Below are positions 15,801 to 62,981 of a DNA stretch of 64,000 nucleotides, one piece after another. The notes under the pieces were generated by a model. The model saw only the letters and a program-made list of their open reading frames with translations, was not told where the DNA came from and made no database searches. Within the stretch, counting starts at the first letter, position 1. Each line of letters starts with the position of its first letter. A program made the position numbers and the translations under genes. This DNA comes from Thalia democratica. Its lineage: Eukaryota. The stretch lies in the NCBI GenBank assembly GCA_965202585.1, contig OZ241828.1:76198001-76262000 (forward strand). Reading direction: 5' to 3'.

Positions 15801-16617
15801 CATTTTAAAAAACACAATTATGTAATAGTAAAAAATTTCATAACAACCAATTAAGTGTTCATTGTTTAATATAATGTTAATAGCTTACTTTAAAGTTCAA
15901 ACGAGAAAACATTGATTATAACATTTTTAATAAACTTAAATGACTTTTTAAGTGACTATTAAACTTTTATCACTTTTATATTAAGCTCTAAATTTGACAC
16001 TTGTTTATGTACACTTTTTAAGTACATAAAGCGTAAGGTGAAGTATTTATTGTTATTTTATTTTATTTTTAGTAATGTACAGTTGTTTAGTTTCTTATTT
16101 CTACTTGTGTTTTCATTTCAAAAAGTTAAATAAACTATTCACTACGTTACAGTTTTATTATACTTTAAATTGATGAACTATGTCTTTGCGAGTTTCTGTT
16201 TTAGATATACTTTACTTCTTATTTAAAAATGACGTTTTTTATGCATATAAATATTGCTTTTGAAAGATAAAAATGCGCTTAAAAAGTTTTATTAAAGGAC
16301 CTAGTGTACGGAAAATCCTTTCGGTAATAAATTAAACCTATTCTAATATAACAAAAATATAAAGAGTGGTATAGTTTAAAAATTAAGCAAGTCAATAACA
16401 TTAATAAGTAGTTTTATTTTTTATAATACATTTATTAACAACTTAATCTAAATTTTTATTTTTCCTAGTTTTTTTAATGCAACTAAAGTTCTTCTTCTCA
16501 TAAATTTTTATATAGTGATGTAAATTGTTTATAAAAAAGTTCTTGCTGTATAGCCAGGCCATAAATCTCTTTTTTTAAATCAATTCATTTTACAGGCTTT
16601 ATTGTCATTAATTTGAA

Positions 16618-16830
16618 ATGATTCGCAGTGCTAGTTCGAATTTTGTTAGTGATTATGCGGTTTGGAGGTACCCTAATCTTTTTACAACAAAACAATTTGC
16701 TAATGGTGTTTTATCAGTCGAATGTTTTCTGTGCGAAGACTTTTACTGTTTTGAGAGCTGCAAGGAAGTTGATGATCATGTTAATTTTCATTACCACAAT
16801 GGGGGAAATACGGAATACTGTGGTCATTAG
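16618..16830 (+). CDS. 70-aa C2H2-like zinc-finger microprotein, copy 1
   Basis: Acceptor tttacag| at 16596, ATG 16618, C-x2-C-x14-H-x3-H, ends YCGH-TAG|gtaag; paralogs differ by in-frame indels only. Confidence 0.8.
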   Translation: MIRSASSNFVSDYAVWRYPNLFTTKQFANGVLSVECFLCEDFYCFESCKEVDDHVNFHYHNGGNTEYCGH

Positions 16831-18732
16831 GTAAGAAATAGAGTTAAATACTTTTTTAAGTAAACTGTTTTGTTAAAACATGTTATTTATGTTGTGTATA
16901 ACAATTAAGTAAGTATGTAGAACTCAAATTTTTTATACTTATAATATTTTATAAGAAATTATTTAGCAATGGCAATGAGCAAGGAAAAAGGTAAAAACAG
17001 ATTATAACGACAATTGTTCAGTTTAACTAATTTTATGGAACTCATGTTTTGAAGTTTATCATAGAATTATATAATTTAAGGTTGGATTTGAAAAAGTTTT
17101 ATAAATTTAGCAATTCATTTTTGACTTTTATTACTATAACTATCGATAAAAACCGCAACTTAAACGCAAACACATGTTTAATGATGATACCAACTAGTTA
17201 AACATTTTAAATTGTATTTTTTTTGTTTATGCAGTCCACTATATTAATGATAAATGTAACAAAGTCAAAAACTATAAATCTAATGTTTTTGTTTCCTGTG
17301 GAATGTATAGTTTTTTGTAGAACTTTGTAGTAGTAGTTGTAGTTATTAAAACTAGAGGTTTTTAATTAACCAATAATTAAGCCATATAAACACATTTATG
17401 TATGAAAAGCAATTCCTAATTTTTTGTTCGAAAAGAGCATTTTACATATAACTTAATATGTGTTAAGTGTAGATTAAATTTTGATAGCTTTTAATTTTAT
17501 TAAAAAGATTACACTTTCCTTTCGTTTTAGTATTACTTTAATGCACAGTGGGCTGACTAAGAAGTTCAAGCGGCTACTGACTATAAAAAAAAATACATAA
17601 TAGAAAATCCAACTAAGTGTTAAACATAGTTGAAAAGAACTTTGTTTCAAGATTGGTTTTGTTACTTTTCGGCTTCAAGTATATAAAAGTTTATGTTAGT
17701 TTAAATCCAACCAGTGTTTGCCTTTTACATTGTAAAAACTACTTAAAATTCTTCATAGTTTTGTCAAAAACTCAATTGCCGAAATTTATAGAAAAATACA
17801 TAAATACTTGTTTAAAAACATTACTATAATCGTTTTTTATAATTTCGGTAAAATGTATAAAAAATATTGAAATAACTTATTAAAAACTAAAATGTCAAAG
17901 TTGTTTTGTTTATAAAAGATATAATGTTTTTTAAAGTAAAAAAGCAAAATGTTGCTTATATAAACCGAAAAAAAAATAGTTATATACCAACAAAACTTTT
18001 TTTTTGTAATTTTGAATATAGAAACCTTGTCATGTTATCTAAAACATAAAAATAAAAGATATTTTTACAATTTGTATTTAAGTTATCTATGTCTTAAAAT
18101 CTTCTATTTTGCATTAATCACACCAATGAATTTCTGGAGAGTTGGGCGGTAATTTTCAAATAAAGAATAAAAACTTTTCTTTTTGAATATTCAAAGAATT
18201 TAAATTTGTTTTCATTAACACAAAACAAAACAAAAAAATTGCCTTTAGGGTATTTTTAAGCAGTTGTAGGCTTTAATTTTGACATATGTTGTAACTTTTT
18301 TTACTTATTTTAAAACTTCATAATAGTAAAAATTTGGTACATTTTTAAGCTTACAAAACTTTAAATGTACTTGAAGCAGAATAAAACCAAACACAGTTTT
18401 TAAAGAACTTAAAGCCCAGCTCTAAATAATTTAATTAAAATCATGGTTTAAATTTAAGGCAGGAAAATAGTCAATGACCACTTGCTAGCCCACTGTGTGA
18501 TAAATATTTCTACAGCTTTTTTACTAAATAATTAATCAGTATTTTTATTCTTTTGAGTTTTAAAACATACAAACAAATATTTGAAACAAAAGTTTTAAAA
18601 ATCACTAGTTCAAAAGCCTCAATCAAGCTAAAAAAGTAAAAGTTTAATAGTAACTTTGTAAATTTAAAGAATTTTATTGAAAATTTTTAATATAGACTCT
18701 ACTCATTTTTACTGTTAGTCTTGTTTTTTTAG

Positions 18733-18930
18733 GTCTTTTTTTTGTAATCCTGCGAATATCAACGTTTCCAGTTTAGTTTGAGTTCTTTATCACTAAGTTG
18801 GTCATCAAACCCACTTGATATGTTTAAATATTTTCTGCTAAAAAATACTGCTGTGTAGAACAAATAATAATACATCTTTGTTTTCTCACTTTCTAATAAT
18901 TGCATTTTTGTGACCGTGTTTTTTTTCTAA
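18733..18930 (+). other. Conserved non-coding block with splice acceptor (putative UTR exon), copy 1; paralogs start at 54237 and 59912 on minus
   Basis: T-tract plus AG at the same position in all three copies; conserved ctgc(g/a)aatatc(a/c)acg(t/g)ttcca core; no shared ORF found. Confidence 0.45.
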
Positions 18931-19142
18931 GCAAATTTTTATATACATAATAAATTCAGTATCAATTTGTTTATATTTTTCTGCTTTTTTTTTCTAGAGA
19001 GTAGTGGTTTATTTAAAGCTTTTAGAGCAAAAATAACAATGTTCATATAAACTTGTAAGTATGTCGACTTAATAATTTTAATATAAACTTCTAAATATTA
19101 GTTAAATATTAATAAATAGGTACTTCACTACACGAACAAAAG

Positions 19143-19290
19143 CAACAACAACTCCATGGGAGAAATCCTACAACCGGTTTGTCCTTATTAAGACTCATCA
19201 GGCAGGCGTAATTGGGAGAAACCGCTGTTAATGAATTGTAACCGGTTGTAGGTTGACGAAACCGGTTGTAGGTTGTCTCGGATACTGTTG
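19143..19290 (+). ncRNA. Long hairpin (hpRNA/pri-miRNA-like), copy 1
   Basis: CCTACAACCGGTTT pairs with AAACCGGTTGTAGG; 3' arm motif AACCGGTTGTAGGTTG is tandemly duplicated. Confidence 0.5.
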
Positions 19291-19752
19291 AAGTTGTGTG
19301 AAGTGTCGTGAAGCTCATTATTAATTATTGATAGCGCGAAACGTCTCAACCTTGTTGATGATGGCCAAAATAATTGCTGGTTTATTACTTATTTTTTATT
19401 CATAATCCTAAATATAATTTAGAACAACTTTTTTTTTAATAAGACATTTTTTGCTTTTATTTAAATCTTAAACGATAGACACAGTTATTTTAATTAAAAA
19501 TATGAATAAAATTTAAAACAAAAAGAACATTAACTTTTATATTTTTTTGTTATAAGTTTATTACTATAATTCTCTTACGACTAATTAAGATAAAACAAAA
19601 ATAGTTCATTAATATTGTTATATATTATTTCATTATAACCCAGTAGCCTAGTGATAAAATTAGTGTGCTTAAAGCTAGCATACTGTGTATGATTACATGA
19701 AATTTGACTGTTCTGAATTGATTATTAAAATAAATACAATCAGGGTTTCACA

Positions 19753-19857
19753 ATGTTGGCCATAATCTGCAAAGGGGCCAAAGGGGGAGCAACAAGGCCA
19801 GTAATTGAAACTAACACCGAGATTCTTGAGTTGTACATTGTTATAAATATTCAATAG
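19753..19857 (+). CDS. 34-aa smORF copy 1 (MLAIICKGAKGGATRPVIETNTEILELYIVINIQ)
   Basis: cag| acceptor 9 nt before TTCACA-ATG; same frame, no indels or internal stops in three diverged copies. Confidence 0.6.
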   Translation: MLAIICKGAKGGATRPVIETNTEILELYIVINIQ

Positions 19858-22800
19858 TTGTTAAATGTATATTACAAATTAATAAATGTTATACGAATAT
19901 TAAAACAAACAACAATACATTTAAAATATTTAGTTATATGTACAGTTAAGGCAATCAGCGTAGAAAATTAAATGATAAATTTTAAAATTTAGACTGTAAT
20001 TATTTATTTCACCTACGTTAAACGAATCAATTAAGGCTACATCAGTTGCATAAAACTTTAAACTTTTTATGTTGAACATTTTAAATAATGTTTTATATTA
20101 GTTTTTCGGCGTATCAATGTGCTTTGAGAAACTAAAATTGTGATTTTTCACAATTGCTTACATAAATTGCAGGAAACACAAATTTGTGCGGAAATGCAAT
20201 TTACACTCAATTATGTTATCAAATACCAATAATGTTTCTTTGATGTGAAACCTTTTATGTAAAAACGTTTTTCGTGTTACTTTGCTAGTTTTGTTTCAGG
20301 AGTGTAATTTATAAAAAAGTAAAACTTTTTCTTAAATTTACTTTTTGGTGCATTGTCTAATTATAAATAATTTGAACTATTATACATTTTTAATTGGCAC
20401 AGCTTAGTTTTATTATATTAATGTTCGTATATTTTACATATTTAATATACGTTTGAGTTTGATATTGATATAAAAAGACTTTACTTATTCCGAGAATGTT
20501 AACAATTTTTTGTGTTAAGAAACTTATAGTGAATAGAAAAGCTTTTAAAAAATATGATATTGTTAATACTTCATATAATAGTTCTAACTTTAAACTATTT
20601 TTAGTATTTTTAACAGCTCTAACGTATTCTATACAAACAGGCACACTTTAACCACAAAAAAAGTTTTTATTTAAAGTTTTATAAATGCATTTACTAAGTG
20701 TATAAAGAATTTTTTAATTGATCGGAAATTTCGAAAATAAAGGTATTTACTGCTAAACAATACTAAAAAACTTTATAAGTAAGTTCTTTCTTTTATTTTG
20801 GCTTATCGAAAAACTCTTTTTTAAAAACATGTACCAGTTTTTATGGTTTTGCTGTAAATGCTTACTTGCTGATATCATAACTTTAAAGCTCAATTTTAAA
20901 ATGTATTTTTTGTTACGATTGATAGTTATCATTCATTAAATTTAATTGAACGTGAAATTTGCAGTTTTTTTGTACTTAAAATTCATTATTTAACTTGCAA
21001 TAAACTGTATTAGAACTTGTTATTATACTATTTTCTTAAATTTCAAGTTCAAAGTAAAAGCTAAACAACTATAATAATCAAAAATTTACGAATAGAACTC
21101 AACATCTAAAAATGATCTATAGTAACCTTTCCCACTAATTTTATTATTTAATAGTCTTACATATTTGCAAAGTTTTACCATGAAACATCTGTTGTAGTTT
21201 AATGAACTTACAATTTTTATTTGAAGTTTTTTTAACTGTTCACAAACTCACTTGATATTCAGATAAACTTAGAATTATAGCTTGCTATAGTAAATTAAAG
21301 AATTACTTTATCGACCAAAAAAATTGTACTACAAATCTTAAAACACTTTAACTTATTTCTTTACAAGTTTTTATAAAACGTAACACAAAACTGTAATGAC
21401 CCTTGAATGTACAATCAAGTTAGCTTAATTAATTTTTTTATACTGGTTTGTAGCTATTTTACAAACTAAAACTGTAACAAAGGTACTAAGTTAGCATTAA
21501 ATCGGTTCTCTTAACTTATGTATGAACAGCAAACTTAAAAAGATTAAACGTAAGCTTGTTAAATAGTAAAAAGTTAAAGTTTATATATAAAACAAGGTAC
21601 CTTAAAAAGAAACAAATCTTATACCTTATTGTACAACATAATATTAATGAATATATTTTTAAAATGATAATTTTAAAGTAAAACTTTTTTGATATGAAAA
21701 TGTCTTACTTTAAGTTTTAACTAAAATTATATTTCGTTAAATGTCTTAAAAAATATAAAACTAAAATATAATAACTGTTCCATAAAAATATTTTGATCAT
21801 CAATATGTAATTAAAAATCACATATAACTTTTTTGTTGTGGTTTCGTTTGATGTGAGGTCATATAAACAATATGATTTATTAGAAGTAGAAGTTTAATAC
21901 ATTAATTTAACCATATAAACTTAGATGTTAATAAAAGTTTTCTTTTAAGTAAATTTTGTGTTTTATATTACTTTAATATTTTAATTTTGTTTTAACTTAA
22001 AGCGTTTATATAGATAAAAATTTTTATATATTAACTACTTTGTCTAGTTTTACTTCTTGTACCCAAGTACTTATTGAAAAATAGGTCGTGTTTATAAAAC
22101 ATTTTAACAATTAATGTTTTCAAAACTTTTGCATATGGTGTTTATTGACATAAAATATCCTAAAGTGCAAAAAAAATTAAAAGCATACTTATGTATGGTT
22201 AGAATTCATTTATATAACAGTTTTACTATAAACTAAAATAACAATGATTTAGTTCAAATAATTTAAAAAGCTTACCATAATTTTTAAACTGCTTACTGTT
22301 AGTAAAGTTTTACTTATTTTACTTACTTTTACACAGACATTAATTAAAAAGTTAATTTTAGTTTCTCATTTAGTTGCTAAGTCAGCACTTACTTAATAAG
22401 AAATATTTAAAAAATAATTTATATGAAAACAACAAAATAAATAAACACAAGACATAAACAAGTGTCAAACCAACTATAAAAGCTATAAATGTTTAATAGT
22501 CACTTAAAAAGTGTTTTAAGTTTATAATTATTGTTGTAGTAAAAATTTTCTCGTATTAAATTTTAAAGAAGCTATAACAACTTTATTAAATAATGAAAAC
22601 TTAATTGGTTGTTATGAATATCTTTTATTAATACATAGTTGTATTTGCTAAATATGAAAAATTTTGTTTAGTTATATTACCAAACCAAAAAATAGCAATT
22701 TTAATTAAATATGTATTGTTTTTCTTAAAATTATAAACAGTAAAATTATGGCTTCAAACGAAGTGATTTTTGTGATTACGTATAAATTATATTGTAATAA

Positions 22801-22929: not shown

Positions 22930-23032
22930 ATTTGAAGATATTGTAAGAAACTTCTTCAATAGATTCGTTACCAGTTATACTACCAACCTCATTACCATCT
23001 TCTACCACATCCTCTATCTTTCACCATGTCCC
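22930..23032 (-). pseudogene. Relic copy of the gene 2 repeat exon
   Basis: ttcaacag|GGG ACA TGG TGA...EDVVEDGNEVGSIT aligns to GAWGMVDDVKNDSNEVGSMT but has an in-frame TGA and no donor. Confidence 0.65.
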
Positions 23033-26000: not shown

Positions 26001-27305
26001 ACAATCAAATTTAGCTATTTTTAAACTTAGTTCATCAATTGAAGTTGTTTAAATAGCAAGTTTATCAGCATTTGCTCAATTGGTTTTAAAAGGTTTTAGA
26101 AAATATAATATGTAAAAATGTGTATTACTTCCATAAATGTTTATCTAAAATTATGTTTGATTGACTATATGACAAAAGTTTCAATAATTAAAGATAAATC
26201 AAAACAAACATCCAGCTACATTACATTTTTAAAATTTAATTACTTACTTTATGTTTATCATGTATAAGTTAGTTTACTTTTTATAAAAAAAACCACCCCA
26301 TATTTACTTCTTTTAGCCTTAAAACATTTAACAGTATTATTTCTAAAGAGAGCAAAAACTGTTTAAAAGCATTTTTAAATGTTTTGTACAAAATATACTA
26401 ACACAAATTTTTATCAAGAAAAAAGTACTAACAGTATATTAATTAAATCTTATCAGGTCGCAATAGATTTAAAAAAAGTTTTCTATCCAAAGTCATATTT
26501 TAAAAGGCTAAGTTGTAGTTAATTATTGATTATAGAAAAAATGTGCTGAAAAATGTACATACAAAACTTTAACATCTTTAGTTGAATTTAAAAGTTTATT
26601 GTAGAGAAGTGACGACAATTTAATATTAATAGAAATTACAAACCCTACCATACCATATTACAGTTTATTGAACGACAAAAAGTCTCAAAACTTTTGGTCC
26701 TTAGGTCTGTTGTACGAAAGAATATTTCGCTTATCGAGTCGCATACCACTTGGATACCTTTTAACGTCTTGTTTACGACACAATTTTAAAAGTTTAACCA
26801 AAAATTCATCATTTTTCAACAATAATTGGTATTATTTATTTTTAATTTATAACCGTCTTTTTTTTTCTTTAACGTTTAAAATTTTATAACTTTAAAATAT
26901 TTAATATTTAAAATTTATAGTAGAGTTGTCATACAAATAAATGCTAACGGTATATAAGTAATTATGCTTTTGAAAAACTTTTTCTTGTACTTTGAAAAAA
27001 TTAAAAAACATTTAATTATGTATATAGTACGGTGTTTTAGTGTTTCTCAAAATGTGGATAGAAGTTTATTTACTTGGCAAAAAAAAAGTAAGAAATACTA
27101 TATTTAAAAACTGTAACTAGCTGTTATGTTTTTATTGTTATTTTATTGACCAAAGAGTAACAAGCACAAAAATAATGAAACATCAAGCGTTATAAGTTTT
27201 TATTGTTCTGAGTTCCTTTTAAAATTATTGTTTATAGACAGAAAGTAAAACTAAACAAATAAGTATAATACATACAATATTTTATCTAAAAAAACTGCTA
27301 TAAGT

Positions 27306-33815: not shown

Positions 33816-34130
33816 TTTACGACCAGTGTGTCGTTTTGCAGCTAGCGAATTTGACAATTTAAACTTTAAGATGTTATGTTGCGGCGACGCGTCGAAGTAC
33901 GAATCCCTATCCCCCACTGACAAGCCATTGTTCGAGTTGAAGCCAGAAGATTTAGAGGCGAATGAAGACGAGGTCATGGAAGCGGAACCAGTCATCGGTT
34001 GCGTTCCAGGAGACATTGTCGTCACAGTCTGGCTCCTGGCGTGCTGCTTCAGCAGAATGGACTTTCTGTCAGTCATACTACCGACTTCGTTACTATCATT
34101 TTTCACATCATCCACCATGCCCCGAGCCCC
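33816..34130 (-). CDS. Gene 2 Ser/Thr-rich repeat exon A1 (105 codons)
   Basis: ttcaacag| acceptor, AAA|gtgagt donor, 315 nt, phase 0 to 0. Confidence 0.8.
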
Positions 34131-34341
34131 CTGTTGAATTACATTGAAATGCTTTAAAAAATGTAATAAATGATTAAATTTTTCCTTGTTTTAACTAAAA
34201 ATTAGACTGTATTTATATTTACTAGAACTTAAAAACAATAAGGTATTTTATTACTATACACGATCACATTATGAAAACAGAAAATAAATTAAATGCTTTC
34301 AATTAAAGTAAATACCATTTAAAGTATAATAAAAATTTCAC

Positions 34342-34506
34342 CGAAGAGGTCACCGAAGCGGATCCAGTCGTCGGTATCTTTCCAGGAGACATTGTCGTCG
34401 CAGTCTGGTTCCTGGCGCGCTGCTTGAGCAGAATAGACTTGTTTTCAGTCATACTACCGACTTCGTTACTATCATTTTTCACATAATCCACCATGCCCCA
34501 TGCCCC
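34342..34506 (-). CDS. Gene 2 truncated repeat exon B1 (55 codons if TCG|gtgaaa is used; otherwise reads to stop at 34303)
   Basis: Same acceptor as A exons; weak donor gives a 165-nt phase 0 to 0 exon. Confidence 0.45.
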
Positions 34507-43900: not shown

Positions 43901-44124
43901 TGCATATGTCATATAAAAAGGTACACAGTATCGTTTACATATTCTCAAAAATATTGCTGTTACCTATATATTTTTAGATTTAAACAATATATATAAAATA
44001 TAAGTACATCATGAATAAACTAGTTATTCTAGTTACCATTATCGATGAAAATAAGAAAATTTTAACCTAAGTTTTTAATTTTTTAATGTATAGGTTTTTA
44101 ATTTACTAGATATTTGAAAAGTAT

Positions 44125-51381: not shown

Positions 51382-51483
51382 TTAAATGCTTATGTCAATG
51401 TACAACTCAAGAGTTTTAGTGTAAGTTTCAATTAATGGCCTTTTTGCTCCCCCTTTGGCCCCTTTGCTGATTATGGCCCACAT
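51382..51483 (-). CDS. 33-aa smORF copy 2 (MWAIISKGAKGGAKRPLIETYTKTLELYIDISI)
   Basis: cag| acceptor 9 nt upstream of ATG, TAA at 51382. Confidence 0.6.
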   Translation of the reverse strand: MWAIISKGAKGGAKRPLIETYTKTLELYIDISI

Positions 51484-51932: not shown

Positions 51933-52066
51933 CAACAGCATTCGAGGCAACCTACGACCAGTTTCATCCTAATTAAAACTCATTTACAGCGGTTTCTCGC
52001 AACTCTGCCTGTCTAATGAGTCTTAATAAGGACGAAACCGGTCGTAGGTTGCCTCCTATGCTGTTG
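51933..52066 (-). ncRNA. Long hairpin copy 2: 52-bp stem, 30-nt loop
   Basis: 46 Watson-Crick pairs, 3 G:U pairs (wobble only on the minus strand), 3 mismatches. Confidence 0.65.
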
Positions 52067-54474
52067 TTGTCGTTGTTAATCGTGTAGTGAAATTCGTTAA
52101 TTATTAATATCAAACTAAAAATGCTTAAAAAAGTTCTAAAAATTGTGTTTGCTTTAATTTACAATACAAATTGCTTTAGTTTGTAGAAGGCTAGGAATTG
52201 AATTACTAGAATAATAAAAAAAACATTAAAATTGAAATTTTTTGAAGGTATGCATTATAAATTATATAATATTTTGTTCATTAGCGTTGTTTTTAACGTT
52301 TTTTATACATATATTTGTTACATATAGATAAAACGTTTTGATATCGCATTTAGTTTTATTTTAATAGCTTTTCTAGGAAAACTGACATAATAATAATTTG
52401 ATAGCTGAAACTGGAAGTTCATGTAGTTTAGTTTTCCTCGAACTTCTTTAAAAAGTTAAAGCATACTTAAGTTCCGGCGTTGTACTTATATAATACGTTT
52501 TAAATAATAATACAATAAATTAAGAATATTTAATTGGCCATTTAGCAAATAAAAGTTTTGTAACACAACTTATTTTTAAAGGATCAGATAACTTACCGAA
52601 AAATGACGATTAAAATTTTTAGAAAAAAAAATACAAATGTTATATTTAGCTGATCTAACAAATACATTTGTTTAGTGTAAACTATAATTAGTACGTAAAA
52701 GACCTTGTTGTATAAGCATCATTATAAACTCTTGTAGTACACTAGCGTTATGTTCCACATTACCTCTAAGAAACATAAATTTAACTAATAAGGATAAAAA
52801 CTCTCTTATTCGTCAAGTTACACTTGCATATTAAAATTTTTTTAAATCCTAATTTGAACTTAATGAAGCTTCATTCGGTCAACAAAACACCATACTAATT
52901 CATTAAAGTCCCTTTGGTAACACTAAAGTACTAATCTTGTTGCAAATCTGAATGCATAAAAATAAGTTAAAAAGAAAATAACATTTCATCTCAACCTAAA
53001 AAAAAATTGACTTGAAAAGTATATTAATTGTCAGTTTTTAAAAATTGTTAAGTAAATTAAAAAGAAGTTAAAAAATATCGAGTATTTGATCTAAGAAATT
53101 TAATTCCTTGAAAAATAAATTAATTTTGTAAACAAATTACCGACTAAATATACTCAAACTTTTAATGTATCATCAATAAGAAAGTTCTAAAAATCTAACA
53201 GATAAAAAAACATTATCAACACTTTACAAGTGCAATACTTTTTGTAAAAAAGAGATAACTTTAAATCTATCTTAAATTAAAATAGAAGAAAAAAAAATTA
53301 CAAGCTCTGAACCTGTATTAAAATTATGCTTTAATCAGTTGATAATAGTAAAATCGTAATGTTTAAGCAATATTTTCCAAAAACGACTTATTAAATTGTT
53401 TTTAAACAATTTAATTTGTTAACTGCATCGTTTTTCTACATAGATGCCGAGTATAAGTAGAAGCAAAAATGTCTACATACATTTACTTTAAAAAGACGTT
53501 GTACGTGAACCTTTTATTCAATTAGTAATAGGATCAAGAAAAATATTAATTTTACTATTAGACTAGAACAAAAGCTGGTTATATCGATTCATCGGAATAC
53601 AACTTAGTTTTGATTTATAAAATTTAATAGCAAAACATAACAACAATTTTTCAAACTTAATTTTTCACATTCGCTTTTGTTTAGTTTAAATAAGTAATAC
53701 GATAATTTATACATACTCAAAAGTTAAAGTTTTATGATACTTTCTTTACTCTGAAGAATGTATGATGAACTTACGTTGCTATACTATAAATCGTTCAATA
53801 AAAGATTTTTTTTTAGATGTTTGTACTAATTTTTTATATGGTAAGGTTTGTTTATCTTTATTTTTTCATTAATAAAGTTTTATACAGAAAAAAATTTTGC
53901 GATTACATAATAAACAAGTTTGTAACGGTTTTTAAGTTTTTTTTGAAAGTTTTTAGTTAACTACTACTTTGTAGTAAAAATCAGAAAAAAAACCATTTAA
54001 AAATTTGATACTGAATTTATTCTTTATATATAAATTAATTAGGAACAAAAACACGGCTACAAAACATAGTTATAAGAAAATGAGAAAACAAAAAAATATT
54101 TTTATTTGTTCTATACAGCAGTTTTTTTAGCAGAAATCTTCAAACATAATATCAAATGCTGTTGATGATTAACTAATTGATGAAAAACTCAAACTAAACT
54201 GGAACCGTTGATATTTGCAGGAAAACAATACAATAACCTAAAAGAAATTAACGTTCAAAATGAGTAAAATTTATAAATAAATTAAAAAAAAATTTGTACC
54301 TTGACAAAAGTACTTTTACCTTGAAGACTTTTAGTTTAGTTATTTCATTTTTCTTTTAAATCATAAGTTTAAAAGATTTAATTTCTACCCATCACCACTT
54401 TATTTATACGCAACATAAATAAAACATATAACAAAACAGGTTACTCAAATAAGTATTAATTAAATTCTCCTTAC

Positions 54475-54699
54475 CTAATGACCACAATATGCCATATATC
54501 CTTCATCATTAATATGACTATGAACATGATAATCAACTTCCTTGCAATCATCAAAAGCGTAATATTCTTTGCACAGAAAACATTTGACTGTAGTTTGACC
54601 GGAAGCATCATTAGTTAAAGTGACATAAGTTGTGTAAAGATTAGGGTACCTCCAAACCGCATAATCGCAGACAAAATTCGATATATAACTGCGAATCAT
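54475..54699 (-). CDS. 74-aa C2H2-like zinc-finger microprotein, copy 2
   Basis: tcacag| acceptor, same ATG, YCGH-TAG|gtaag. Confidence 0.8.
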   Translation of the reverse strand: MIRSYISNFVCDYAVWRYPNLYTTYVTLTNDASGQTTVKCFLCKEYYAFDDCKEVDYHVHSHINDEGYMAYCGH

Positions 54700-57368
54700 T
54701 TCAGCTTAACAACAAAAAAGCCTGTGATATTATTTGATAAAAAAAAAGATCATTAGCTTGGCTATACAGCAAAAACTTTTTTATAAACTGTTTTCATCAT
54801 TGTATAAATTTTATGAGACATAGAACTTAAGTTGCTTAAAAAATCTAGAATAAATAAAATTCTAAGCGTGACTTTAAGTAATACTTTATATAAACTAACA
54901 CTTTTTATTGATTCAACTTGTTTTAAAGTGTAGACTGCTATTTTAAGACAAGCCAGCTTAATTTTTATATAACACTACTTAAAATATATATAGAGTTAAA
55001 AATAAAATTTACACACATAAACATTTATACATGGTAAATATAAATATATGTTTTATATACAACTAATAATTTTTTTTTTGTTTTACCCAGTTTAGTTATT
55101 TTTTTTTGATGGTCTATAACGTTTAAAGAATATGGTTTTAATGATCATAGTCTTAAAACTGTTCCTACATTCTTTTAAAATACCAAAATTGTTAACAGAT
55201 GTTCTTTTATTTTTACAACTATTAAAATACTAACATGGTCGAATACATCTTTCTTCCTTTTTAAAGTTCTTCACTCTTTCTATTAGTGGTATCGAAAATT
55301 TAATTCTTTTGTATATAGAGGTCTGACTATAGAATGTCAAAATTGATTAAGCTATTAAACATTAGTAAATACTAAAACTCACAAAAACATAGTTTAAAAT
55401 TTATTGGTGTGATAAAATTTTTAATGTATTCATTGCTTAAATAACCTTAAGAAAAGCTAACGCAGCTAAAAATAGTGAACTGAATAACAATTTATTATAA
55501 GATAATAAAAAGCACAAGAAACACTTTACCTAATGTGTTATTTACTTATTTAAAAATGTTTTATCTATTTGTTAGGGAATATTCATTTTTTTTACAGTTT
55601 ATTCTTTTGTAAATAAACATAAATAAAGTATATTTAGATGTCTCTTTAATCCATTTAAGATAAAGAAAATAAGATAGTACGACATTTAAAGAATTAAGTC
55701 ACTGCTGTATATTTAAACTGAAAAATAAGGTAAGTTAAAATTTGAAGTTTTATTAATTTTAAACACTTTTATTGAATTTTGTTAGTGTTTTTTTTCTTAA
55801 ACAATATTTTTAGCGTAACTGTAAATGTCTCTCGATAAATGTAACGTTTTAAGTAGAAATTTAAATTGTAAAACATTTTAATTGGATGTAAGCTAAACAC
55901 ATAACTAAATTTATATTTCAAAAACTTATACCGTTCTACAGTTTCAGCTGACTAGTAAACAAGTACTTATGTATTAAAAACTTTGTTAAATGTAAACCTT
56001 AGGAACAGTTATTTTATGTCTTTTATATCTTTGTAAGAAACTTTTTAACAATAAATTACAAAAATTGGTGATCTTTAAAATAAGCATACAGTAGCGTACA
56101 AACAAATTATTTTACTTGGCACAGAAAGTTTTTGAATATAAAAAAAAATATTGTAGTTCATTTTAGTTAATGATTAAACAGTGGGCTGGTTTCCTGAGCG
56201 ACCCCTGGAAACAACTTTAAAAAAATAATAAAAACGCGGTTGAATATGGTTTTCGTTTAAAAATATTTATTAATAATTAAATCTGTATGCTCAGTTTTTG
56301 ACATCAAGGGAAGTTTAGTTCGTAACTTTTTTGAGCTTTATCAAAAAGGTTTTATAATGTTTTGTAGAATAAAGAAGTATAAATTATATAAAAGTGTTAT
56401 AACTACGAAAGTTGCGAAACTTTATAAAGGAAGCTTTTAGTATAAAATCTGCAAATCAGTTTGAAAACATGTTTTTAAAACTATTTCTGATTTATTTCAC
56501 ATCTCAAAGGGTTTCATATTTAACTCTTAAAACTTTTGACGAAATAACACATTGTTTTTATTCTTAGAACATTCAAAAACCGTAATTTCACATTTTTTTT
56601 GCTTTAAATAAATCTGTCAAATAATTCTTTATATTCGCTATTAGTTTGTTTTTAATTAAAACTTTATTTTAAACAAACTTATTGTAACTTGGAGTTTATG
56701 ACAAAAATCTTATTCATATATCATTAAATATGTTTTTCTATTATTATCACAAGTTAATTACATTTTAGATTAGTTTTTCGATTTTATTTTATTATGTTTA
56801 ATTCATTTCCTTTTTCATGTTGGCTTCACAATGTTTTGGCTTCGATTTTATTTCCACATGTATTATATATTTTCTTGTTCATGTTAGCTTCACAATGTAT
56901 TGACAAAATTTTCACATTGTCAGTAAAAAAAGGACTTCCGTATAAACTTATTTAAATCACTAGAAACTAGAAAACTGAAGTGCTAATCAAAATTTTTCAT
57001 TCTGGTAAACTAGTGTTTTTAAACTTTTTTAATTCTAAATATTTTCATGTTAATGCAAAAGTTGAGCCATTTGTGTTATAGACAACATAGTTTTCTATAG
57101 TTTATTATTAAAAGCCTCTACATTAAACACTCTATTATTTAACAAAAAATGCTGTAACTCCACTGGAAAACGTTTAGAATTACCCAATAAAAATTACTGG
57201 TTACCATTTTTTTTTATTTAAAATAATTATACGTATCGTCTAAGATTTAAACAAAAGCGAAAAACATCTTGTTTAAAAACAAAAATGAAATGCTGCGCTA
57301 AAAACTTTTACTTAGGATTTTAACAACATAATAAGTAGTAAACCAGTATTTATTTCATATAGCATAGT

Positions 57369-57470
57369 TTAGATATTTATGACAATGTTCACCTCAATAA
57401 TATCGGTGTGAGTGTATAATAATGGCAGTGTGCTTTCCGATTTGGCCCCTTTGCAGATTATTGCGTACAT
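57369..57470 (-). CDS. 33-aa smORF copy 3 (MYAIICKGAKSESTLPLLYTHTDIIEVNIVINI)
   Basis: cag| acceptor 9 nt upstream of ATG, TAA at 57369. Confidence 0.6.
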   Translation of the reverse strand: MYAIICKGAKSESTLPLLYTHTDIIEVNIVINI

Positions 57471-57937
57471 TGTGAAACGCTGATGTACATTTATTTTTAA
57501 TATCAAATTCAGAATAGTCAATTGTCATGTAACCGTACACAGTAAATTTCACGCCCACTTGTTTTATCATTAGGCTACTGGGTTAACATGAAAAAATAAT
57601 ACAGTAATAGTAATAAACTACTTTTATTTAAACTTAGTAAATTGTGAAATAAATGTAGCAAAAAACTTATAACAACAATAAATTTAACTTAAAATTATTT
57701 TGTTTTTAATGTTATCCAATTTTTTTAACTAAAGTTACTATAAATATTGTTTAAGATTTAAACAAAAGCAGAAAAAATCTTCTGTAAACAAACAAAAAAA
57801 GGTGTGATAGAAAGTTAAATTTAGGATTATAACTAAATGATAAATGATAAACCATTATTTACCTTGGTCACCATCAACAAGGCTTAGAAGTCTGGCGCTA
57901 ACTATCATAAGTAATTAACTTCGCACAACAGCAGCAG

Positions 57938-58042
57938 CCGAGACAACCTACGACCGGTTTCATCCTAATTAAAACTCATTAACAGCGGTTTATCGCGACT
58001 CTGTTTGCCTGATGAGTCGAAAACGGTCGTAAGTTGTCTCGG
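57938..58042 (-). ncRNA. Long hairpin copy 3 (24-bp core stem retained, about 12 nt deleted from one arm)
   Basis: CCGAGACAACTTACGACCGTTTTC pairs with GAAACCGGTCGTAGGTTGTCTCGG with one G:U on the minus strand and one mismatch. Confidence 0.55.
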
Positions 58043-60149
58043 ATATTGTTACTGATGTTGGTGGTGTGGTCAAGTTAATTATTTACTGATACTAAACTAA
58101 ATATGCTATAAAAAGTTATGAAAATAATTTTTGCTTTAAGTTACAATATAAACTGCTGCAGTTTGTAGAAGCCTAGAAATAGGAAATGTTTGAATAGTAA
58201 AAAACATTTAAATTGGTGATTTTTGAAGGTACCCATTATTAATTGTATAATATTTTCTTAAAAGCCTTGTTTTAATAGTTTTTAAGAGGCATTATTACAC
58301 AAAGACAACGAACTTTTGTATCGCACTTAATTTTATTTGATAATCTTTTTAAAAGTTTGTATACTAATAATTTGAATAAAAAAACCGTTTAAATTTCATG
58401 TATTTTAATTTTCCTGGAACGTGTAAGTGATATTAAAAGGTAAAAGAATGGTTAAATTCCGGCATCGTATTTAAATAACTTGCTTTATAGATAAAATTAA
58501 TAAATTAAGAGTTGTAAAGTGGCCATTTAGCAAAAAAAGTTTTGTAATGGAAAGGCTTATAAATAATATCGAGTATTTAATCTAAGAAACTTATTTCCTT
58601 AAAAAATAAATTAATTTTGTTGATAAACAAGCACCTTAAACTACTTAAACTTTAAATGTTTGATCAATAAAAAACTTCTCAAAATCTAACAGATAATAAA
58701 AACGTTATCAAAACTTAATTAGTACAATATTTTCTTTACAAAAGAGATAACTTTAAATCTATCTTAAATTAAAATAGGAGAAAAAATTACAAGCTTTCGA
58801 CATGTATTGAAATTATGCTTTAATCAGTTTATAATAGTAAAATCGTAATGTTTAAGCAATATTTTCCAAAAACGACTTATAAAATTGTTTTTAAACAATT
58901 TAATTTGTTAACTGCATCGTTTTTCTACATAAATGCTGAGTATAAGTAGAATCAAAAATGTCTACTTACATTTACTTTAAAGAGACGTTGTACGTGAACC
59001 TTTAATTCAATAAGTAATAGGATCAAGATAAATATTAATTTTACTATTAGACTAGACACGAAAGCTGGTTATATCGATTCATCGGAATATAACTTAGTTT
59101 TAATTTATAAAATTTAATGGCAAAACATAACAATAATTTTTCAAACTTAATTTTCACATTCGTTTTTGTTTAGTTTAAATAAGTAAAACGATAATTTATA
59201 CATACTCAAAAGTTAAAGTTTTATGATACTTTCTTTACTCTGAAGAATGTATGATGAACTTACGTTAGTATACTATAAATTGTTTAATAAAAGAAATTAT
59301 TTTTTTTTTAAATGTGCTATTACTAATTTTTTATATGGTAAGGTTTGTTTATCTTAATTTTTCATTAATGAAGTTTTATACTGAAAAAAATTTTGCTAAA
59401 TTTAATAATGCTGTTTTCTACATACTCAAAAGTTGTGATACTTTCATTACTCTAAAGAATGTATGATTAACTTACGTTGCTATTCTATAAATCGATTCAA
59501 AAAAGAAACTAGATGCTTTGCAAATTCTAATCTTTTATATGGTAAAGCTGGTTTCTCTTAAATTATTTATTTATGAAGTTTTATATATAATACAATTATT
59601 ATGATGACATAAAAAACAAGTTTGTTAAGATTATTATTTTTGCTTTAAAAACTTTGTAGTAAAAATAAAAAAAAAGCATTTTGATACGGAATTTATTATG
59701 TATAATAATACCAACTTAAAACAAAAACACGGTTACATACACAATTCGAAGAAAATGAGAAAACAAAAATTTAATATTATTTGTTCTACACAGCAGATTT
59801 CTTTAGTAGAAATCTTCAAATATAATATCAAGTGCGGTTGATGACTAACTAAATGATGAAAACTCAAACTTAATTGGAACCGTGGATATTTGCAGGAATA
59901 CAAAACAAAAACCTGAAAAAAAATTAACGTTCAAAATGAGTAAAATTTATAAATAAATTAAAAAAAATCTGTACCTTGACAAAAGTACTTTTACCTTGAA
60001 GATTTTTAGTTTAGTTATTTCATTTTTCTTTTAAATCATAAGTTTAAAAGATTTAATTTCTACCCATCACCACTTTTTTTATACGCCACATAAATAAATC
60101 ATATAACAAAACAGGTTACTCAAATAAGTATTAATTTAATTCTCCTTAC

Positions 60150-60371
60150 CTAATGACCACAATATGCCATATATCCCTCATCATTAACATGACTATGAAC
60201 ATGATCATCAACTTCCTTGCAATCATCAAAAGCGTAATATTCTTTGCACAGAAAACATTGAACTGTAATTTGATTGGAGGCTTCATCAGTAAGTTCGTAA
60301 ATTGTATAAAGATTAGGGTACCTCCAAACCGCATAATCGCAAACAAAATTCGATACATAACTGCGAATCAT
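60150..60371 (-). CDS. 73-aa C2H2-like zinc-finger microprotein, copy 3 (ATG 60371; the ORF-track extension is intronic)
   Basis: tttcacag| acceptor, same start and end as paralogs. Confidence 0.8.
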   Translation of the reverse strand: MIRSYVSNFVCDYAVWRYPNLYTIYELTDEASNQITVQCFLCKEYYAFDDCKEVDDHVHSHVNDEGYMAYCGH

Positions 60372-62981
60372 TTCAAATTGACAACAATAAATTCTGTGAA
60401 ATAATTTGATTAAAAAAAATATTATTAGCACGGCTGTGCAGCAAGAACTTATTATAAAATATTTTCATTATTACATAAAAACTTATGAGGTATAGAACTT
60501 TAGTTGATTAAAATACCTAGAAAAAAGTAAAATTCTAAGCTTTTCTTTAAACCATACACTATACAAAATTACACCTTTTATTAATTTAGCTTGTTTTAAA
60601 GCTAGACTGATTTTTTAAGACAAGCCAGCTTAATTTTTATTTACTTAAAGATTCTACTTAAAAGATTTATTAAATTTTTAATCAAATTCTGCACATAAAC
60701 ATTAATATCTATTAAATGTAAATATATATATATACAACTAATTAAAATTTCTTTTTTGGTAATACCCGGTTTAGTTAATCATTTGTTTAAAATTGGTATA
60801 TAACGTTTAATTGAATTGGCTTCACTGATCAGAGTCTAAAACTTATTCCTAAATACTTTTAAAGTATTAGAATTGTTAACAGATGCTCTTTTATTTTTAC
60901 AATTATTACAATTACTAATATGGTCGGATACAGCTGATTTTCATTTTAAATATTCTTCGACTCTTTCTATTAGTGGTTTTTCTATTAATTGTTATTCATG
61001 CAGAGGTCTGACTGTAAAATGTCAAATTTTATTAAGTCGTTAAACATAACTAAAGCGTAAACTAACAGAAATATACTTTATCATTTGAAAGTATAATAAA
61101 ATATATAATTTTTTACTACTTTATTTAACCTTTAGAAAGACAAACGCAACCAGAAAGATATTTCTGAATAAGTTTCAATTACCATTCAAAATGCATAATA
61201 AATACTTTACCTTACGTTTTTTAAACTTAATTTTTTTTTTATCTATCTATTAGTTTATATTTATTTTTTTTACAGTTTATCCTTTGGTAAGTAAACCTTA
61301 TTAAAATATATTAAGATGTTTCTACAATGCACTATTAAAATATTATTAATATTGAAAATTAGATAGTACAGCATTTTAAAATATATGCTACTGTTGTATG
61401 TCTTAAATTTATAAAACAAGGTGAGTTAAAATTTAAAGTTATACTAGGTATTAATTCTTTTAATAATTTTTTTGATCTTTTCCTTAAATAAGATGTAAAA
61501 CACATACATTTTTAATTGGATTTAAGCTAAATATATGACTAAACTTATATTTCAAAAACTTGTACCGTTACAAAGTTTCAGCTGACAAGTAAACTAATAC
61601 TTTGTTAAATGTAGGCTTAAGGAACAGTTATTTTATGTCTTTTATATCTTTGTAAAAAACCTACTTTACAGTTAGTTCAGAAAGTTTTCTAAAATAAACG
61701 AAATAATTTTTTGTTTCCTGTGCGACATCTGAGAAAAAACTGGGATTAACTTTATAAAAATGCAATTGAATATGTTTTCTTTTACTTTACTAAAACATCA
61801 TATATGTATGTTTATATTTTGACATTGACTAAAGTTTAGCTTTTTTTTTAAACTACGTTAAAAATGACGTAGTTTTATAATTTTTTGTTGGAAATTAAAT
61901 GTATCAGTTAAAAATCTTATAACTACGATAGTTGCTTAACTTAATAAAGTAAACTTCTAATATAAAATCAACAAAACAAAAGTTTTTTTTATTCTATTTT
62001 TGATTTGTTTTAAAACTTAGTTGTTAAGCAGATTTTTTAATGTAAAAACAAAATTCCAACTAATCGATTAAATAAAGAAATATTTCATCTACTTGATAAT
62101 CAAAGTCAGTATATAAATGAATTTACTAATCTGTATGTGAATAAATAATAATTAAAATTTAAGTTTTATAACAATATTCAATTTTTTACAATTTAGTGAA
62201 ATAATAAAAAACCTTAACTTTGAATCAGTTTAAAACTTAATATAATATTCGTTTAAAAAATTTTTAATTTTTAAATGTAGAATATTAAATGTAAAAAAAA
62301 ATGGTATAAACAATAATAAAAAATAGAATCATGTTAGCATCGAATTACAATTACTTTTTTTAAAGGTTTAATTTACCATAAATCAATTACTAATTTTATA
62401 CTGAAAAACATCAATTCGTTTTAACAGACTTATATTTTTGATTAACTTACTCATACTATTTATTATAATTATAATATTTTTTAAAAAACAATACAATTTT
62501 TTTTACTAAAAATTATTCGTATATAACTTCAAAATCTTAATTACATATCAAGCTCTTACAACTACGTTAAGTTATGTTTACACAATTTTAACTTTTCAGT
62601 TTAAAATATAGTCAGAATATAAAAAACTACTTTTCTTATTGCTTACAAACTATAATATTTGAAAAGCTCATTTTTATTGCAATTCAAAACAAAATACTAA
62701 TAAAAATAAAATTACCACAAATCATATACAAATATTTTAGTAAAAGATACAAATTAGTTGTATCGGACTCACATATCTACGATTCAATTTGCAAATCAAA
62801 ATGTGTAATCGAAAATATTGCTTGCATGCTATAAAAATAATATAATATTTTTTGCAACTTAAATAATTAACTTTCGGCTTTAAAAACTTAAACTATCATG
62901 TCAAACTACATTATAAAAAGTTTACACAAATTCGACTGTACAGTCATGCTAAACTACACAGTCACAGAAACTGCTTGAAAA

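What the first reader, a model, noticed from the sequence alone, without database searches (positions are those of the whole stretch)
16380..19900. Triplicated cassette: zinc-finger microprotein + non-coding exon + long hairpin + 33-aa micropeptide, same order and strand
Seen: four modules recur collinearly and co-oriented in three copies (16.4-19.9 kb +, 51.3-54.9 kb -, 57.3-60.6 kb -), while the spacers between them gain or lose kilobases. The ZnF, non-coding and smORF modules each begin at a conserved AG acceptor, and the ZnF stop is followed at once by a donor. Inference: one spliced, possibly bicistronic transcript encoding two microproteins and hosting a small-RNA precursor. Young, amplified, fast-diverging genes coupled to hairpin RNAs are established in Drosophila sex-ratio conflict (Dox family with Nmy/Tmy hpRNAs), and polycistronic smORF mRNAs are established for tarsal-less/pri; this is analogy only, no homology is claimed. 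Best candidate for an undescribed system in the window.
Basis: partly seen in the sequence, partly recalled or inferred. Interest (0 to 1): 0.88.

Follow-up and report, generated by a model that had tools for sequence, protein, structure and literature searches.

The report
Small zinc-finger gene family plus transposon relic
The three repeated "cassettes" are three old copies of one duplicated stretch of salp DNA holding a real but undescribed gene for a 70-74-residue zinc-finger protein, while the "hairpin" is a dead copy of a very common ribozyme-bearing jumping element and the 33-residue ORF shows no sign of coding, so the proposed two-protein-plus-small-RNA system is not supported.

Summary
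OBSERVATION: confirmed. Three collinear, co-oriented copies exist (A 16.4-19.9 kb +, B 54.9-51.0 kb -, C 60.5-57.4 kb -), 72-81% identical. They are not discrete cassettes. A and B lie in an ~11-kb inverted segmental duplication, B and C in a ~5-kb tandem one.

ZINC-FINGER ORF: real. It is intact in all three copies with only in-frame indels. At least 11 further 66-81-aa relatives occur on AT-rich marine metagenome contigs. Some are so distant that only the protein and an AG acceptor 15-22 nt before the ATG remain.

"NON-CODING EXON": most simply this gene's 3'-UTR exon. It is 221-222 nt from a conserved acceptor to a conserved AATAAA in every copy.

HAIRPIN: a decayed head-to-head copy of the genome's minimal hammerhead-ribozyme (Penelope/retrozyme-type) repeat. 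Read depth is about 1,300 times single-copy. Each copy carries a different inactivating lesion.

smORF: dN/dS is about 1 and changes are spread evenly over codon positions.

TRANSCRIPTION: untested. No run known to be RNA was found to hold the stretch. One same-sample run of unrecorded kind (X4) had no contigs on copy A.

The scan had already described this ribozyme repeat family on other DNA of this genome.

VERDICT: an undescribed small zinc-finger gene family next to an ordinary transposon relic. Modest interest.

The parts
16596..16830 (+). Copy A, predicted exon 1 of the zinc-finger microprotein gene. AG acceptor at 16594-16595, 22-nt leader, CDS 16618-16830 (70 aa plus TAG). GT donor at 16831.
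   Evidence: An in-frame TAA inside the leader shows the ATG is the true start.
16831..18732 (+). Copy A, predicted 3'-UTR intron of 1902 nt (237 nt in B and C). It contains repeats at 17524-17891 and 18444-18627.
   Evidence: (depth 40-55x single-copy).
18733..18954 (+). Copy A, the 'non-coding exon', read here as the terminal 3'-UTR exon. It runs from the acceptor to a conserved AATAAA at 18949-18954.
   Evidence: The acceptor-to-AATAAA length is 222, 222 and 221 nt in A, B and C. Indels of 1-2 nt show it is non-coding.
19122..19317 (.). Copy A, foldback made of two inverted, decayed copies of the minimal hammerhead-ribozyme repeat. The core relic lies on the minus strand at about 19160-19210, with CUGAUGA at 19201-19195. 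The G of GAAA is lost.
   Evidence: (depth about 49,600 against about 36-40).
19364..19547 (.). Copy A, a further repeated stretch next to the foldback, probably the body of the same element.
   Evidence: depth about 6,300, roughly 170x single-copy.
19753..19857 (+). Copy A, the 34-codon 'smORF'. It is open in all three copies but has no coding signature. It sits inside a conserved non-coding block, 19612-19860.
54475..54721 (-). Copy B, exon 1. CDS 54699-54475, 74 aa plus TAG.
54016..54237 (-). Copy B, predicted 3'-UTR exon ending in AATAAA (54021-54016).
51933..52066 (.). Copy B, hammerhead foldback. The best-preserved ribozyme relic is on the window + strand at 51995-52062, with CUAAUGA in place of CUGAUGA.
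   Evidence: Rfam Hammerhead_HH9, 18 bits, E 0.089. (29 of 31 bases match the core, none expected by chance)..
51382..51483 (-). Copy B, the 33-codon ORF.
60150..60393 (-). Copy C, exon 1. CDS 60371-60150, 73 aa plus TAG.
59692..59912 (-). Copy C, predicted 3'-UTR exon ending in AATAAA (59697-59692).
57930..58050 (.). Copy C, hammerhead foldback. CUGAUGAG is kept on the window + strand, but an 11-nt deletion has removed helix II.
57369..57470 (-). Copy C, the 33-codon ORF.

Best explanation
A segment of salp DNA was duplicated twice, once inverted (A against B) and once in tandem (B against C). Each copy holds the following.

(1) A small two-exon gene.
- Exon 1 starts at a conserved AG acceptor 22 nt before the ATG. 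The acceptor is most likely a spliced-leader trans-splice site, as in other tunicates; this is inferred.
- Exon 1 encodes a complete 70-74-aa protein: an N-terminal helix (MIRSxxSNFVxDYAxWRYP) followed by a single C2H2/BED-like zinc finger (CxxC-x14-HxxxH plus an invariant CK-V motif).
- The stop codon forms the last three bases of the exon (TAG|GTAAG).
- An intron follows, 237 nt in B and C and 1.9 kb in A.
- Then comes a 222-nt 3'-UTR exon ending at AATAAA.
- The protein is probably a small nucleic-acid-binding zinc finger. It evolves fast outside its scaffold.

(2) Downstream of that poly(A) signal lies an old head-to-head insertion of the genome's Penelope/retrozyme-type hammerhead repeat. 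It was already present before the duplications and has decayed independently in each copy.

(3) Further downstream lies duplicated non-coding DNA in which a 33-34-codon frame happens to have stayed open.

Shown: the duplication architecture, the protein family, the transposon origin of the hairpin, and the lack of coding signal in the smORF. Inferred: splicing of exon 1 to exon 2, trans-splicing, poly(A) site use, and zinc and DNA binding.
For: DUPLICATION MAP
-.

ZINC-FINGER GENE
- All three ORFs are open, and their indels are of 3, 9 and 12 nt.
- A profile search of 1.84 billion proteins found only small relatives, P0001-P0004, at E 4e-42 to 6e-7.
- The word-based search added P0007-P0013, E 1e-20 to 1e-29, all 66-81 aa.
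- They sit on AT-rich (23-28% GC) marine metagenome contigs.
- L002-L005 share no alignable DNA with the window, yet the protein is found at tblastn E 1e-13 to 1e-15. They still have an AG 15-17 nt before the ATG.
- L003-L005 have AATAAA 38 nt after the stop and no donor, so the ORF is a complete gene product.
- Invariant residues are M1 I2 R3 N8 D12 A14 Y18 C C C K V H.
- Deep dN/dS is 0.18-0.39 with saturated dS; among close paralogues it is 0.38-1.44.
- The AF2 model has pLDDT 72.9 and is helix + three strands + helix.
- 9 of the 30 best AFDB cluster matches are BED-type domain proteins, but all are weak.
- The TAG|GTAAG or GTGAG donor is kept in L001 and L006-L011.
- Exon 2 measures 222/222/221 nt up to a conserved AATAAA.

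HAIRPIN
- Depth is about 49,600 against about 36-40 for single-copy DNA, with dozens of contigs branching off at 19255 and 19290.
- The consensus of those branches contains CUGAUGAGUCC.
- The order of parts is helix I, CUGAUGA, GUCY-UAAUAA-GGAC, GAAA, CCGG, UC.
- There is an Rfam HH9 hit and a 29/31 match to the core.
- The lesions differ: A has lost the G of GAAA, B has G-to-A in CUGAUGA, and C has an 11-nt deletion.
- Inverted 5'-truncated copies and hammerheads in pseudo-LTRs are standard for Penelope-like elements (PMC8557442). Animal retrozymes are described in PMC7229834.

smORF
- dN/dS is 0.60, 1.15 and 1.14. Differences by codon position are 4/5/4, 10/5/8 and 11/9/9.
Against: - There is no transcript evidence of any kind. 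No run known to be RNA held the stretch.
- Run X4 (same sample, kind not recorded) has no contigs on copy A. I suspect it is RNA only because its contig depths vary widely. If it is, the gene is silent or rare in that sample.
- AATAAA is frequent in 24%-GC DNA, and the three copies are related, so its conservation is weak evidence for a poly(A) site.
- dN/dS among the window's own copies (0.38-1.05 across the two calculations) is compatible with relaxed constraint on some copies.
- One relative (P0010) has a premature stop.
- The zinc-finger assignment rests on the ligand pattern. No Pfam model reaches its threshold and no solved structure matches.
- A read-through transcript that includes the foldback is not excluded.
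Confidence: 0.6

Rival explanations
1. One spliced transcript joins the zinc-finger exon, the non-coding exon and the smORF exon, encodes two microproteins, and hosts a hairpin that is processed into small RNAs. This would be a conflict-type cassette.
For: - The four blocks have the same order and strand in three copies.
- Conserved AG dinucleotides precede blocks 1, 2 and 4.
- The donor sits directly after the stop codon.
- The family is amplified and evolves fast.
- The foldback still folds better than shuffled sequence, z -3.0 and -4.5.
Against: - Collinearity follows simply from segmental duplication, and the neighbouring 7 kb is equally collinear.
- The hairpin is a relic of a repeat at about 1,300x depth and shares nothing with the zinc-finger gene.
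- The smORF has dN/dS about 1.
- No donor is evident at the end of block 2, where a conserved AATAAA sits instead.
- Distant relatives of the zinc-finger gene end in AATAAA right after the stop, so they are single-cistron genes.
Confidence: 0.07
2. The whole unit is a low-copy mobile element or its cargo. For example, it could be a non-autonomous derivative of a hAT-type DNA transposon that keeps only the BED-like DNA-binding finger of the transposase. That finger might act as a truncated-transposase repressor of the kind known for the P-element KP protein.
For: - The best, though weak, fold matches are BED-type domains and a hAT-family protein.
- Depth over the zinc-finger exon and the smORF block is about 8-14x single-copy, which suggests more copies elsewhere.
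- Many paralogue lineages appear in metagenomes, with promoter-proximal DNA conserved for over 1 kb.
Against: - No terminal repeats or sharp common boundaries were seen. Homology between copies fades at different places.
- Pfam zf-BED reaches only E 0.32, in one of seven members.
- PDB comparison puts the ZBED1 BED domain at only Z 2.1.
- No transposase remnant lies nearby.
Confidence: 0.15
3. The zinc-finger ORFs in this window are decaying duplicates (pseudogenes in the making) of a family whose working members lie elsewhere. Nothing in the three copies is expressed.
For: - dN/dS is 0.73-1.05 between A and B/C.
- There are no contigs on copy A in run X4, which may or may not be RNA.
- P0010 shows that members can acquire premature stops.
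Against: - All three ORFs are intact after about 25% divergence, with only in-frame indels, in DNA where about 9% of random codons are stops.
- All zinc ligands and the N-terminal motif are invariant.
- B against C gives dN/dS 0.38.
Confidence: 0.15

Closest known systems
Minimal type I hammerhead ribozymes of Penelope-like elements / animal non-LTR retrozymes (PMC7229834; PMC8557442; bioRxiv 10.64898/2026.07.22.740005)
   Same: - Core order: CUGAUGA, short helix II, GAAA, a one-base-pair helix III capped by the palindromic CCGG, then UC and helix I.
- Very high genomic copy number.
- Head-to-head inverted partial copy, as is usual for Penelope-type insertions.
   Different: - All three copies here are inactivated, each by a different lesion.
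- They score far below Rfam's gathering threshold (18 against 52 bits).
- No reverse-transcriptase partner is in the window.
BED-type and other single C2H2-like zinc fingers (Pfam zf-BED PF02892, zf-C2H2_ZNF592 PF25412)
   Same: - Aromatic-rich N-terminal segment (W/Y/F), then CxxC, about 14 residues, then H-x3-5-H.
- Predicted strand-strand-helix core.
- BED-domain proteins dominate the weak AFDB matches.
   Different: - No Pfam model reaches its threshold.
- There is an extra invariant Cys-Lys-x-Val motif.
- The whole protein is only 66-81 aa and has no other domain.
- No solved structure matches at Z of 5 or more.
Drosophila Dox/MDox with Nmy/Tmy hairpin-RNA suppressors
   Same: A young, amplified, fast-diverging small-protein family lying in segmental duplications close to an inverted repeat.
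   Different: Nmy and Tmy hairpins are inverted duplicates of the gene they silence. Here the hairpin arms are copies of an unrelated transposon and have no similarity to the zinc-finger gene. No small-RNA data are available.
tarsal-less / polished rice polycistronic smORF mRNA
   Same: Very short ORFs in an apparently non-coding context.
   Different: The tal peptides are repeated and strongly conserved at the amino-acid level. The 33-aa ORF here has dN/dS about 1, no repeats and no relatives.
Spliced-leader trans-spliced genes of tunicates (Ciona, PMC1488885; Oikopleura, PMC6883708)
   Same: A strong acceptor (T-rich tract plus AG) a few nucleotides upstream of the start codon, with no conserved upstream donor.
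   Different: Trans-splicing was not demonstrated here. No RNA data were available, and I did not identify the spliced leader of this species.

Membership tests
Penelope/retrozyme-type hammerhead repeat (as a decayed copy) | Catalytic core motifs in canonical order: helix I, CUGAUGA, helix II, GAAA, short helix III, UH cleavage site | tested here: met
   B + strand 52013-52043 matches the core at 29 of 31 bases, with 0 expected by chance. The same order is readable in A (minus strand) and C. Each copy has one disabling lesion.
Penelope/retrozyme-type hammerhead repeat (as a decayed copy) | Reaches the Rfam hammerhead gathering score | tested here: not met
   Hammerhead_HH9 scores 18 bits against a gathering score of 52, E 0.089, in copy B only. 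This is expected for mutated relics.
Penelope/retrozyme-type hammerhead repeat (as a decayed copy) | High copy number, dispersed in the genome | tested here: met
   Summed contig depth is about 49,600 at 19180-19363 against about 36-40 for single-copy contigs. 25-40 contigs branch off at 19255 and 19290 in each of three DNA runs. This agrees with earlier scan notes of more than 2,000 copies, which I did not check independently.
Penelope/retrozyme-type hammerhead repeat (as a decayed copy) | Inverted 5'-truncated partner copy at the insertion (PMC8557442) | tested here: met
   Both arms of the foldback carry the ribozyme sequence in opposite orientation.
Active self-cleaving hammerhead ribozyme | Intact invariant core nucleotides (G5, G12 and others) and helix II | tested here: not met
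   A has lost the G of GAAA. B has CUAAUGA. C lacks helix II through an 11-nt deletion.
C2H2 / BED-type zinc finger | CxxC ... H-x3-5-H ligand set with conserved hydrophobic or aromatic positions | tested here: met
   C-x2-C-x14-H is invariant in 14 sequences. The second His lies at +4 or +3/+6.
C2H2 / BED-type zinc finger | Significant match to a curated family model | tested here: not met
   The best hits are zf-C2H2_ZNF592 at E 0.007 (below its cut-off) and zf-BED at E 0.32. The profile search of PDB sequences gave nothing below E 0.69.
C2H2 / BED-type zinc finger | Fold match to a solved or predicted BED or C2H2 domain | tested here: inconclusive
   In AFDB clusters, 9 of the top 30 are BED-type, at E 0.14-0.5 and TM 0.41-0.48. 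In the PDB, ZBED1 2ct5 gives TM 0.37 and Z 2.1. The model's pLDDT is 72.9.
C2H2 / BED-type zinc finger | Binds zinc and nucleic acid | not testable with these tools
   Needs recombinant protein.
Hairpin-RNA suppressor paired with its target gene (Dox/Nmy type) | Hairpin arms derive from, and are complementary to, the paired coding gene | tested here: not met
   There is no similarity between 19100-19350 and the zinc-finger or smORF blocks. The arms are transposon copies.
Hairpin-RNA suppressor paired with its target gene (Dox/Nmy type) | Produces 21-nt small RNAs | not testable with these tools
   No small-RNA run was available.
Polycistronic smORF mRNA (tarsal-less type) | smORF peptide under purifying selection | tested here: not met
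   dN/dS is 0.60-1.15 and changes are even across codon positions. There are no relatives outside the three copies.
Polycistronic smORF mRNA (tarsal-less type) | Both ORFs on one mature mRNA | not testable with these tools
   No run known to be RNA held the locus. The conserved AATAAA between the two ORFs argues against it.

The most novel reading that the evidence does not exclude
The zinc-finger microprotein is a stand-alone, fast-evolving DNA-binding finger, perhaps descended from a transposase BED domain, that takes part in a genetic conflict. The adjacent transposon-derived foldback would be co-transcribed by read-through and yield small RNAs. The linkage kept through three duplications would then be functional rather than passive.
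Probability: 0.05. Interest if true: 0.7.

Novelty: new member of a known kind. Interest (0 to 1): 0.27.

Why it matters
The proposed new system breaks down into ordinary parts. This saves follow-up effort on a hairpin that is a transposon scar and on an ORF that is not coding.

What remains is a clean example of an unannotated, lineage-restricted microprotein gene family:
- 66-81 aa with a single zinc finger;
- the stop codon is built into the splice donor;
- it has so far been seen only in this genome and in AT-rich (23-28% GC) marine metagenome contigs.

Such families are missed by standard annotation. They could be useful markers for this AT-rich source in ocean metagenomes, and the family is a candidate small DNA- or RNA-binding regulator.

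The case also shows how Penelope-type hammerhead foldbacks can mimic small-RNA precursors in a genome where they number in the thousands.

Tried and rejected
- Rfam at gathering thresholds over the whole window found nothing. In E-value mode, copy A's hairpin and the smORF block gave only noise. Plant miRNA-family hits on copy B merely reflect a long hairpin.
- tRNA scan: none, so the conserved block before the smORF is not a tRNA-derived SINE.
- Consensus folding of the smORF block showed no covariation.
- A short cis-intron upstream of the zinc-finger exon was rejected. The candidate GTATAG donor is lost in C and L001.
- Antisense and +1-frame ORFs overlapping the zinc-finger ORF are interrupted in A and B and are low-complexity, so they were rejected.
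- The JGI metagenome scan for relatives with long flanks gave one spurious 42%-GC locus, L012.
- Exact-sequence look-ups of the three window proteins found nothing on record, so no assembled transcript could be recovered.
- PDB sequence and fold searches gave no significant match. The protein Atlas gave only small unnamed or C2H2-type clusters.
- A search for coding exons in the co-duplicated 19.9-27 kb found none.
- The earlier-findings look-up by sequence was blank.

Full report
SETTING
The window is 24% G+C eukaryotic DNA. Earlier notes of this scan place the genome in a pelagic tunicate, most likely a salp. I did not test that, but the relatives I found all sit on AT-rich marine metagenome contigs, many from Tara Oceans.

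Yes.
- BLAST of 16.0-20.2 kb against the window recovers two further collinear, co-oriented copies on the minus strand. B is at 54,912-51,040 and C at 60,534-57,373. Identity is 72-81% in the same four blocks.
- The window-wide self-comparison shows they are not free-standing cassettes.
  - A and B are the inner ends of an inverted segmental duplication, 15.7-26.9 kb against 54.9-42.6 kb.
  - B and C are a tandem duplication, 51.4-56.5 kb against 57.4-62.0 kb.
- Background identity of the A-B duplication is about 80%. Two patches of 94-100% (20,084-21,400 and 26,291-26,903) look like gene conversion. The four 'modules' (67-87%) are no better conserved than the duplicated DNA beside them.
- The kilobase 'spacers' are insertions and deletions.
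  - A has 1.7 kb between blocks 1 and 2 that B and C lack. Part of it (up to about 17,630) is shared with the related contigs L001, L007 and L009-L011, so B and C probably lost it.
  - B and C have 1.5-1.8 kb between blocks 2 and 3 that A lacks.
- Reads from two runs of one sample and one run of another sample cover copy A's unique parts with error-free contigs at single-copy depth (32-37). The copies are therefore real, not assembly artefacts.

THE ZINC-FINGER MICROPROTEIN IS A GENUINE GENE FAMILY
- The ORF is open in all three copies (70, 74 and 73 aa). Their indels are of 3, 9 and 12 nt. In A and B an in-frame TAA lies between the acceptor and the ATG, so the ATG is the start.
- A profile of the three proteins, scored against 1.84 billion proteins, found only four real relatives of 67-76 aa (E 4e-42 to 6e-7). 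Two weaker hits were unrelated long repeat proteins.
- A second search added seven more relatives, of 66-81 aa. None carries a name or a Pfam domain.
- Fourteen sequences share invariant M1 I2 R3 N8 D12 A14 Y18, C-x2-C, C-K-x-V and His.
- The distant members (L002-L005) have no alignable DNA in common with the window. Yet the protein is found at tblastn E 1e-13 to 1e-15. That is the clearest sign of selection on the protein.
- Pairwise dN/dS is 0.18-0.39 at those depths, with saturated dS. Among close paralogues it is 0.38-1.44. The picture is a conserved scaffold with fast-changing loops and tail.

GENE STRUCTURE
- Every member has a T-rich tract and an AG 15-22 nt before the ATG, even where the flanks no longer align. 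No conserved upstream donor exists.
- In tunicates such acceptors commonly receive a spliced leader (PMC1488885, PMC6883708). I infer this here but could not test it.
- In the window's clade the stop is the end of the exon (TAG|GTAAG, or GTGAG in L009-L011). In L003-L005 the stop is followed by AATAAA 38 nt later, with no donor. The ORF is therefore a complete product, and the downstream intron is a clade-specific 3'-UTR intron.
- Block 2 begins at a conserved acceptor: 18,733 in A, 54,237 in B and 59,912 in C. It has 1-2-nt indels, so it is non-coding.
- Block 2 carries a conserved AATAAA exactly 222, 222 and 221 nt from the acceptor. Beyond that point the alignment degrades into T-rich sequence.
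- The simplest model is a two-exon gene of about 480 nt of mRNA that ends there.

WHAT THE PROTEIN IS
- No Pfam model reaches its threshold. The best are zf-C2H2_ZNF592 at E 0.007 and zf-BED at E 0.32.
- No PDB sequence is related.
- An AlphaFold model built on the 14-sequence alignment has pLDDT 72.9. It shows a helix, three strands and a helix.
- Foldseek finds nothing significant in the PDB. The second-look aligner gives Z below 5 throughout, and Z 2.1 for the ZBED1 BED domain.
- Among AFDB clusters, 9 of the 30 best matches are BED-type domain proteins, but at E 0.14-0.5 and TM 0.41-0.48.
- The Atlas places it near small C2H2-type clusters.
- I therefore call it a single C2H2/BED-like zinc finger with an N-terminal helix. 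Family membership is unproven, and nucleic-acid binding is an inference.

THE HAIRPIN IS A TRANSPOSON SCAR
- Summed contig depth is about 49,600 over 19,180-19,363 and about 6,300 over 19,364-19,547. Single-copy contigs give 36-40. In each DNA run, 25-40 contigs diverge from the window at 19,255 and 19,290.
- The consensus of those branches reads GCCUGC-CUGAUGA-GUCC-UAAUAA-GGA. This is the 5' half of a hammerhead ribozyme.
- In copy B the window + strand reads CUAAUGAG-UCUUAAUAAGGAC-GAAA-CCGG-UC-GUAGG.
  - It matches Rfam Hammerhead_HH9 weakly (18 bits, E 0.089).
  - It matches the reconstructed core at 29 of 31 bases, with none expected by chance.
- The one-base-pair helix III capped by the palindromic CCGG is the minimal type I design of Penelope-like elements and animal retrozymes (PMC7229834; bioRxiv 10.64898/2026.07.22.740005).
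- Both arms of the hairpin carry this sequence in opposite orientation. This is the inverted 5'-truncated partner that Penelope-type insertions usually make (PMC8557442).
- The element sits at the same place in all three copies, so it predates the duplications.
- It has since been disabled differently in each copy: loss of the G of GAAA in A, G-to-A in CUGAUGA in B, and an 11-nt deletion of helix II in C.
- It shares nothing with the zinc-finger gene.
- Earlier follow-ups in this scan described the same family (328-334 nt, over 2,000 copies, foldbacks as the normal insertion scar) on other pieces of this genome. My depth and motif results agree with them.

THE smORF
- The frame is open in all three copies (34, 33 and 33 codons).
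- Pairwise dN/dS is 0.60, 1.15 and 1.14. Differences fall evenly on codon positions: 4/5/4, 10/5/8 and 11/9/9.
- The non-ORF sequence just upstream (19,612-19,750) is at least as conserved.
- There is no relative in any fetched locus.
- There is no Rfam match and no covarying structure.
- It also lies beyond the predicted poly(A) signal of the zinc-finger gene.
- I read it as duplicated non-coding DNA. Depth there is about 13x single-copy and about 8-10x over the zinc-finger exon. This suggests further copies of the unit elsewhere in the genome, but summed contig depth is a crude measure.

TRANSCRIPTION
- I could not test it.
- Neither run search returned a run recorded as RNA. The one run listed under the RNA search (X3) covers introns and spacers evenly, so it behaves as DNA.
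- Run X4, from the same sample as X1, has contigs whose depths range from 2 to 350. That suggests RNA, but its kind is not recorded. It has nothing on copy A.
- This is weak negative evidence at most.

VERDICT
The 'system' does not.
- What is there is a segmentally duplicated, undescribed small zinc-finger gene with a 3'-UTR intron, followed by a dead Penelope/retrozyme hammerhead foldback and by non-coding DNA.
- The zinc-finger family is a modestly interesting orphan. The rest is ordinary.

Noticed in passing
window 20084-21400 vs about 51130-49800, and 26291-26903 vs about 43200-42585: Inside the roughly 80%-identical inverted duplication, two patches are 94-100% identical. No ORF of note lies there. 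This looks like recent gene conversion between the inverted arms.
   Followed up: partly
window 32898-38143: A tandem array of about 1.9-kb units (88-94% identical) lies between the arms of the inverted duplication. Each of the three ORF-bearing units has a 108-112-aa Ser/Thr-rich ORF on the minus strand, with no Pfam match. Pieces of the unit also occur in both arms (22958-23610 and 47.4-48.5 kb).
   Followed up: no
window 44118-44174 and 44646-44996: Two self-complementary stretches: a 57-nt near-perfect palindrome and a 350-nt palindrome at 77%. They lie inside the B arm and have no counterpart in the A arm.
   Followed up: no
L009-L011 (protein P0010): This family member has a premature stop. 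The ancestral C-terminal YCGH-stop-donor sequence is still readable just downstream. It is found on three independent metagenome contigs, so it is a real allele or paralogue.
   Followed up: partly
window 16236-16419, 17524-17891, 18444-18627: Three other interspersed repeats at 40-55x single-copy depth flank or interrupt copy A. The first is shared with contig L007 but absent from B and C.
   Followed up: no
window 16540-16560 and equivalents in B, C, L006-L009: A conserved TATAAAAAAG lies about 95 nt before the ATG, followed by a conserved GTTCTTGCTGTATAGCC block. This is a candidate core promoter of the zinc-finger genes.
   Followed up: partly
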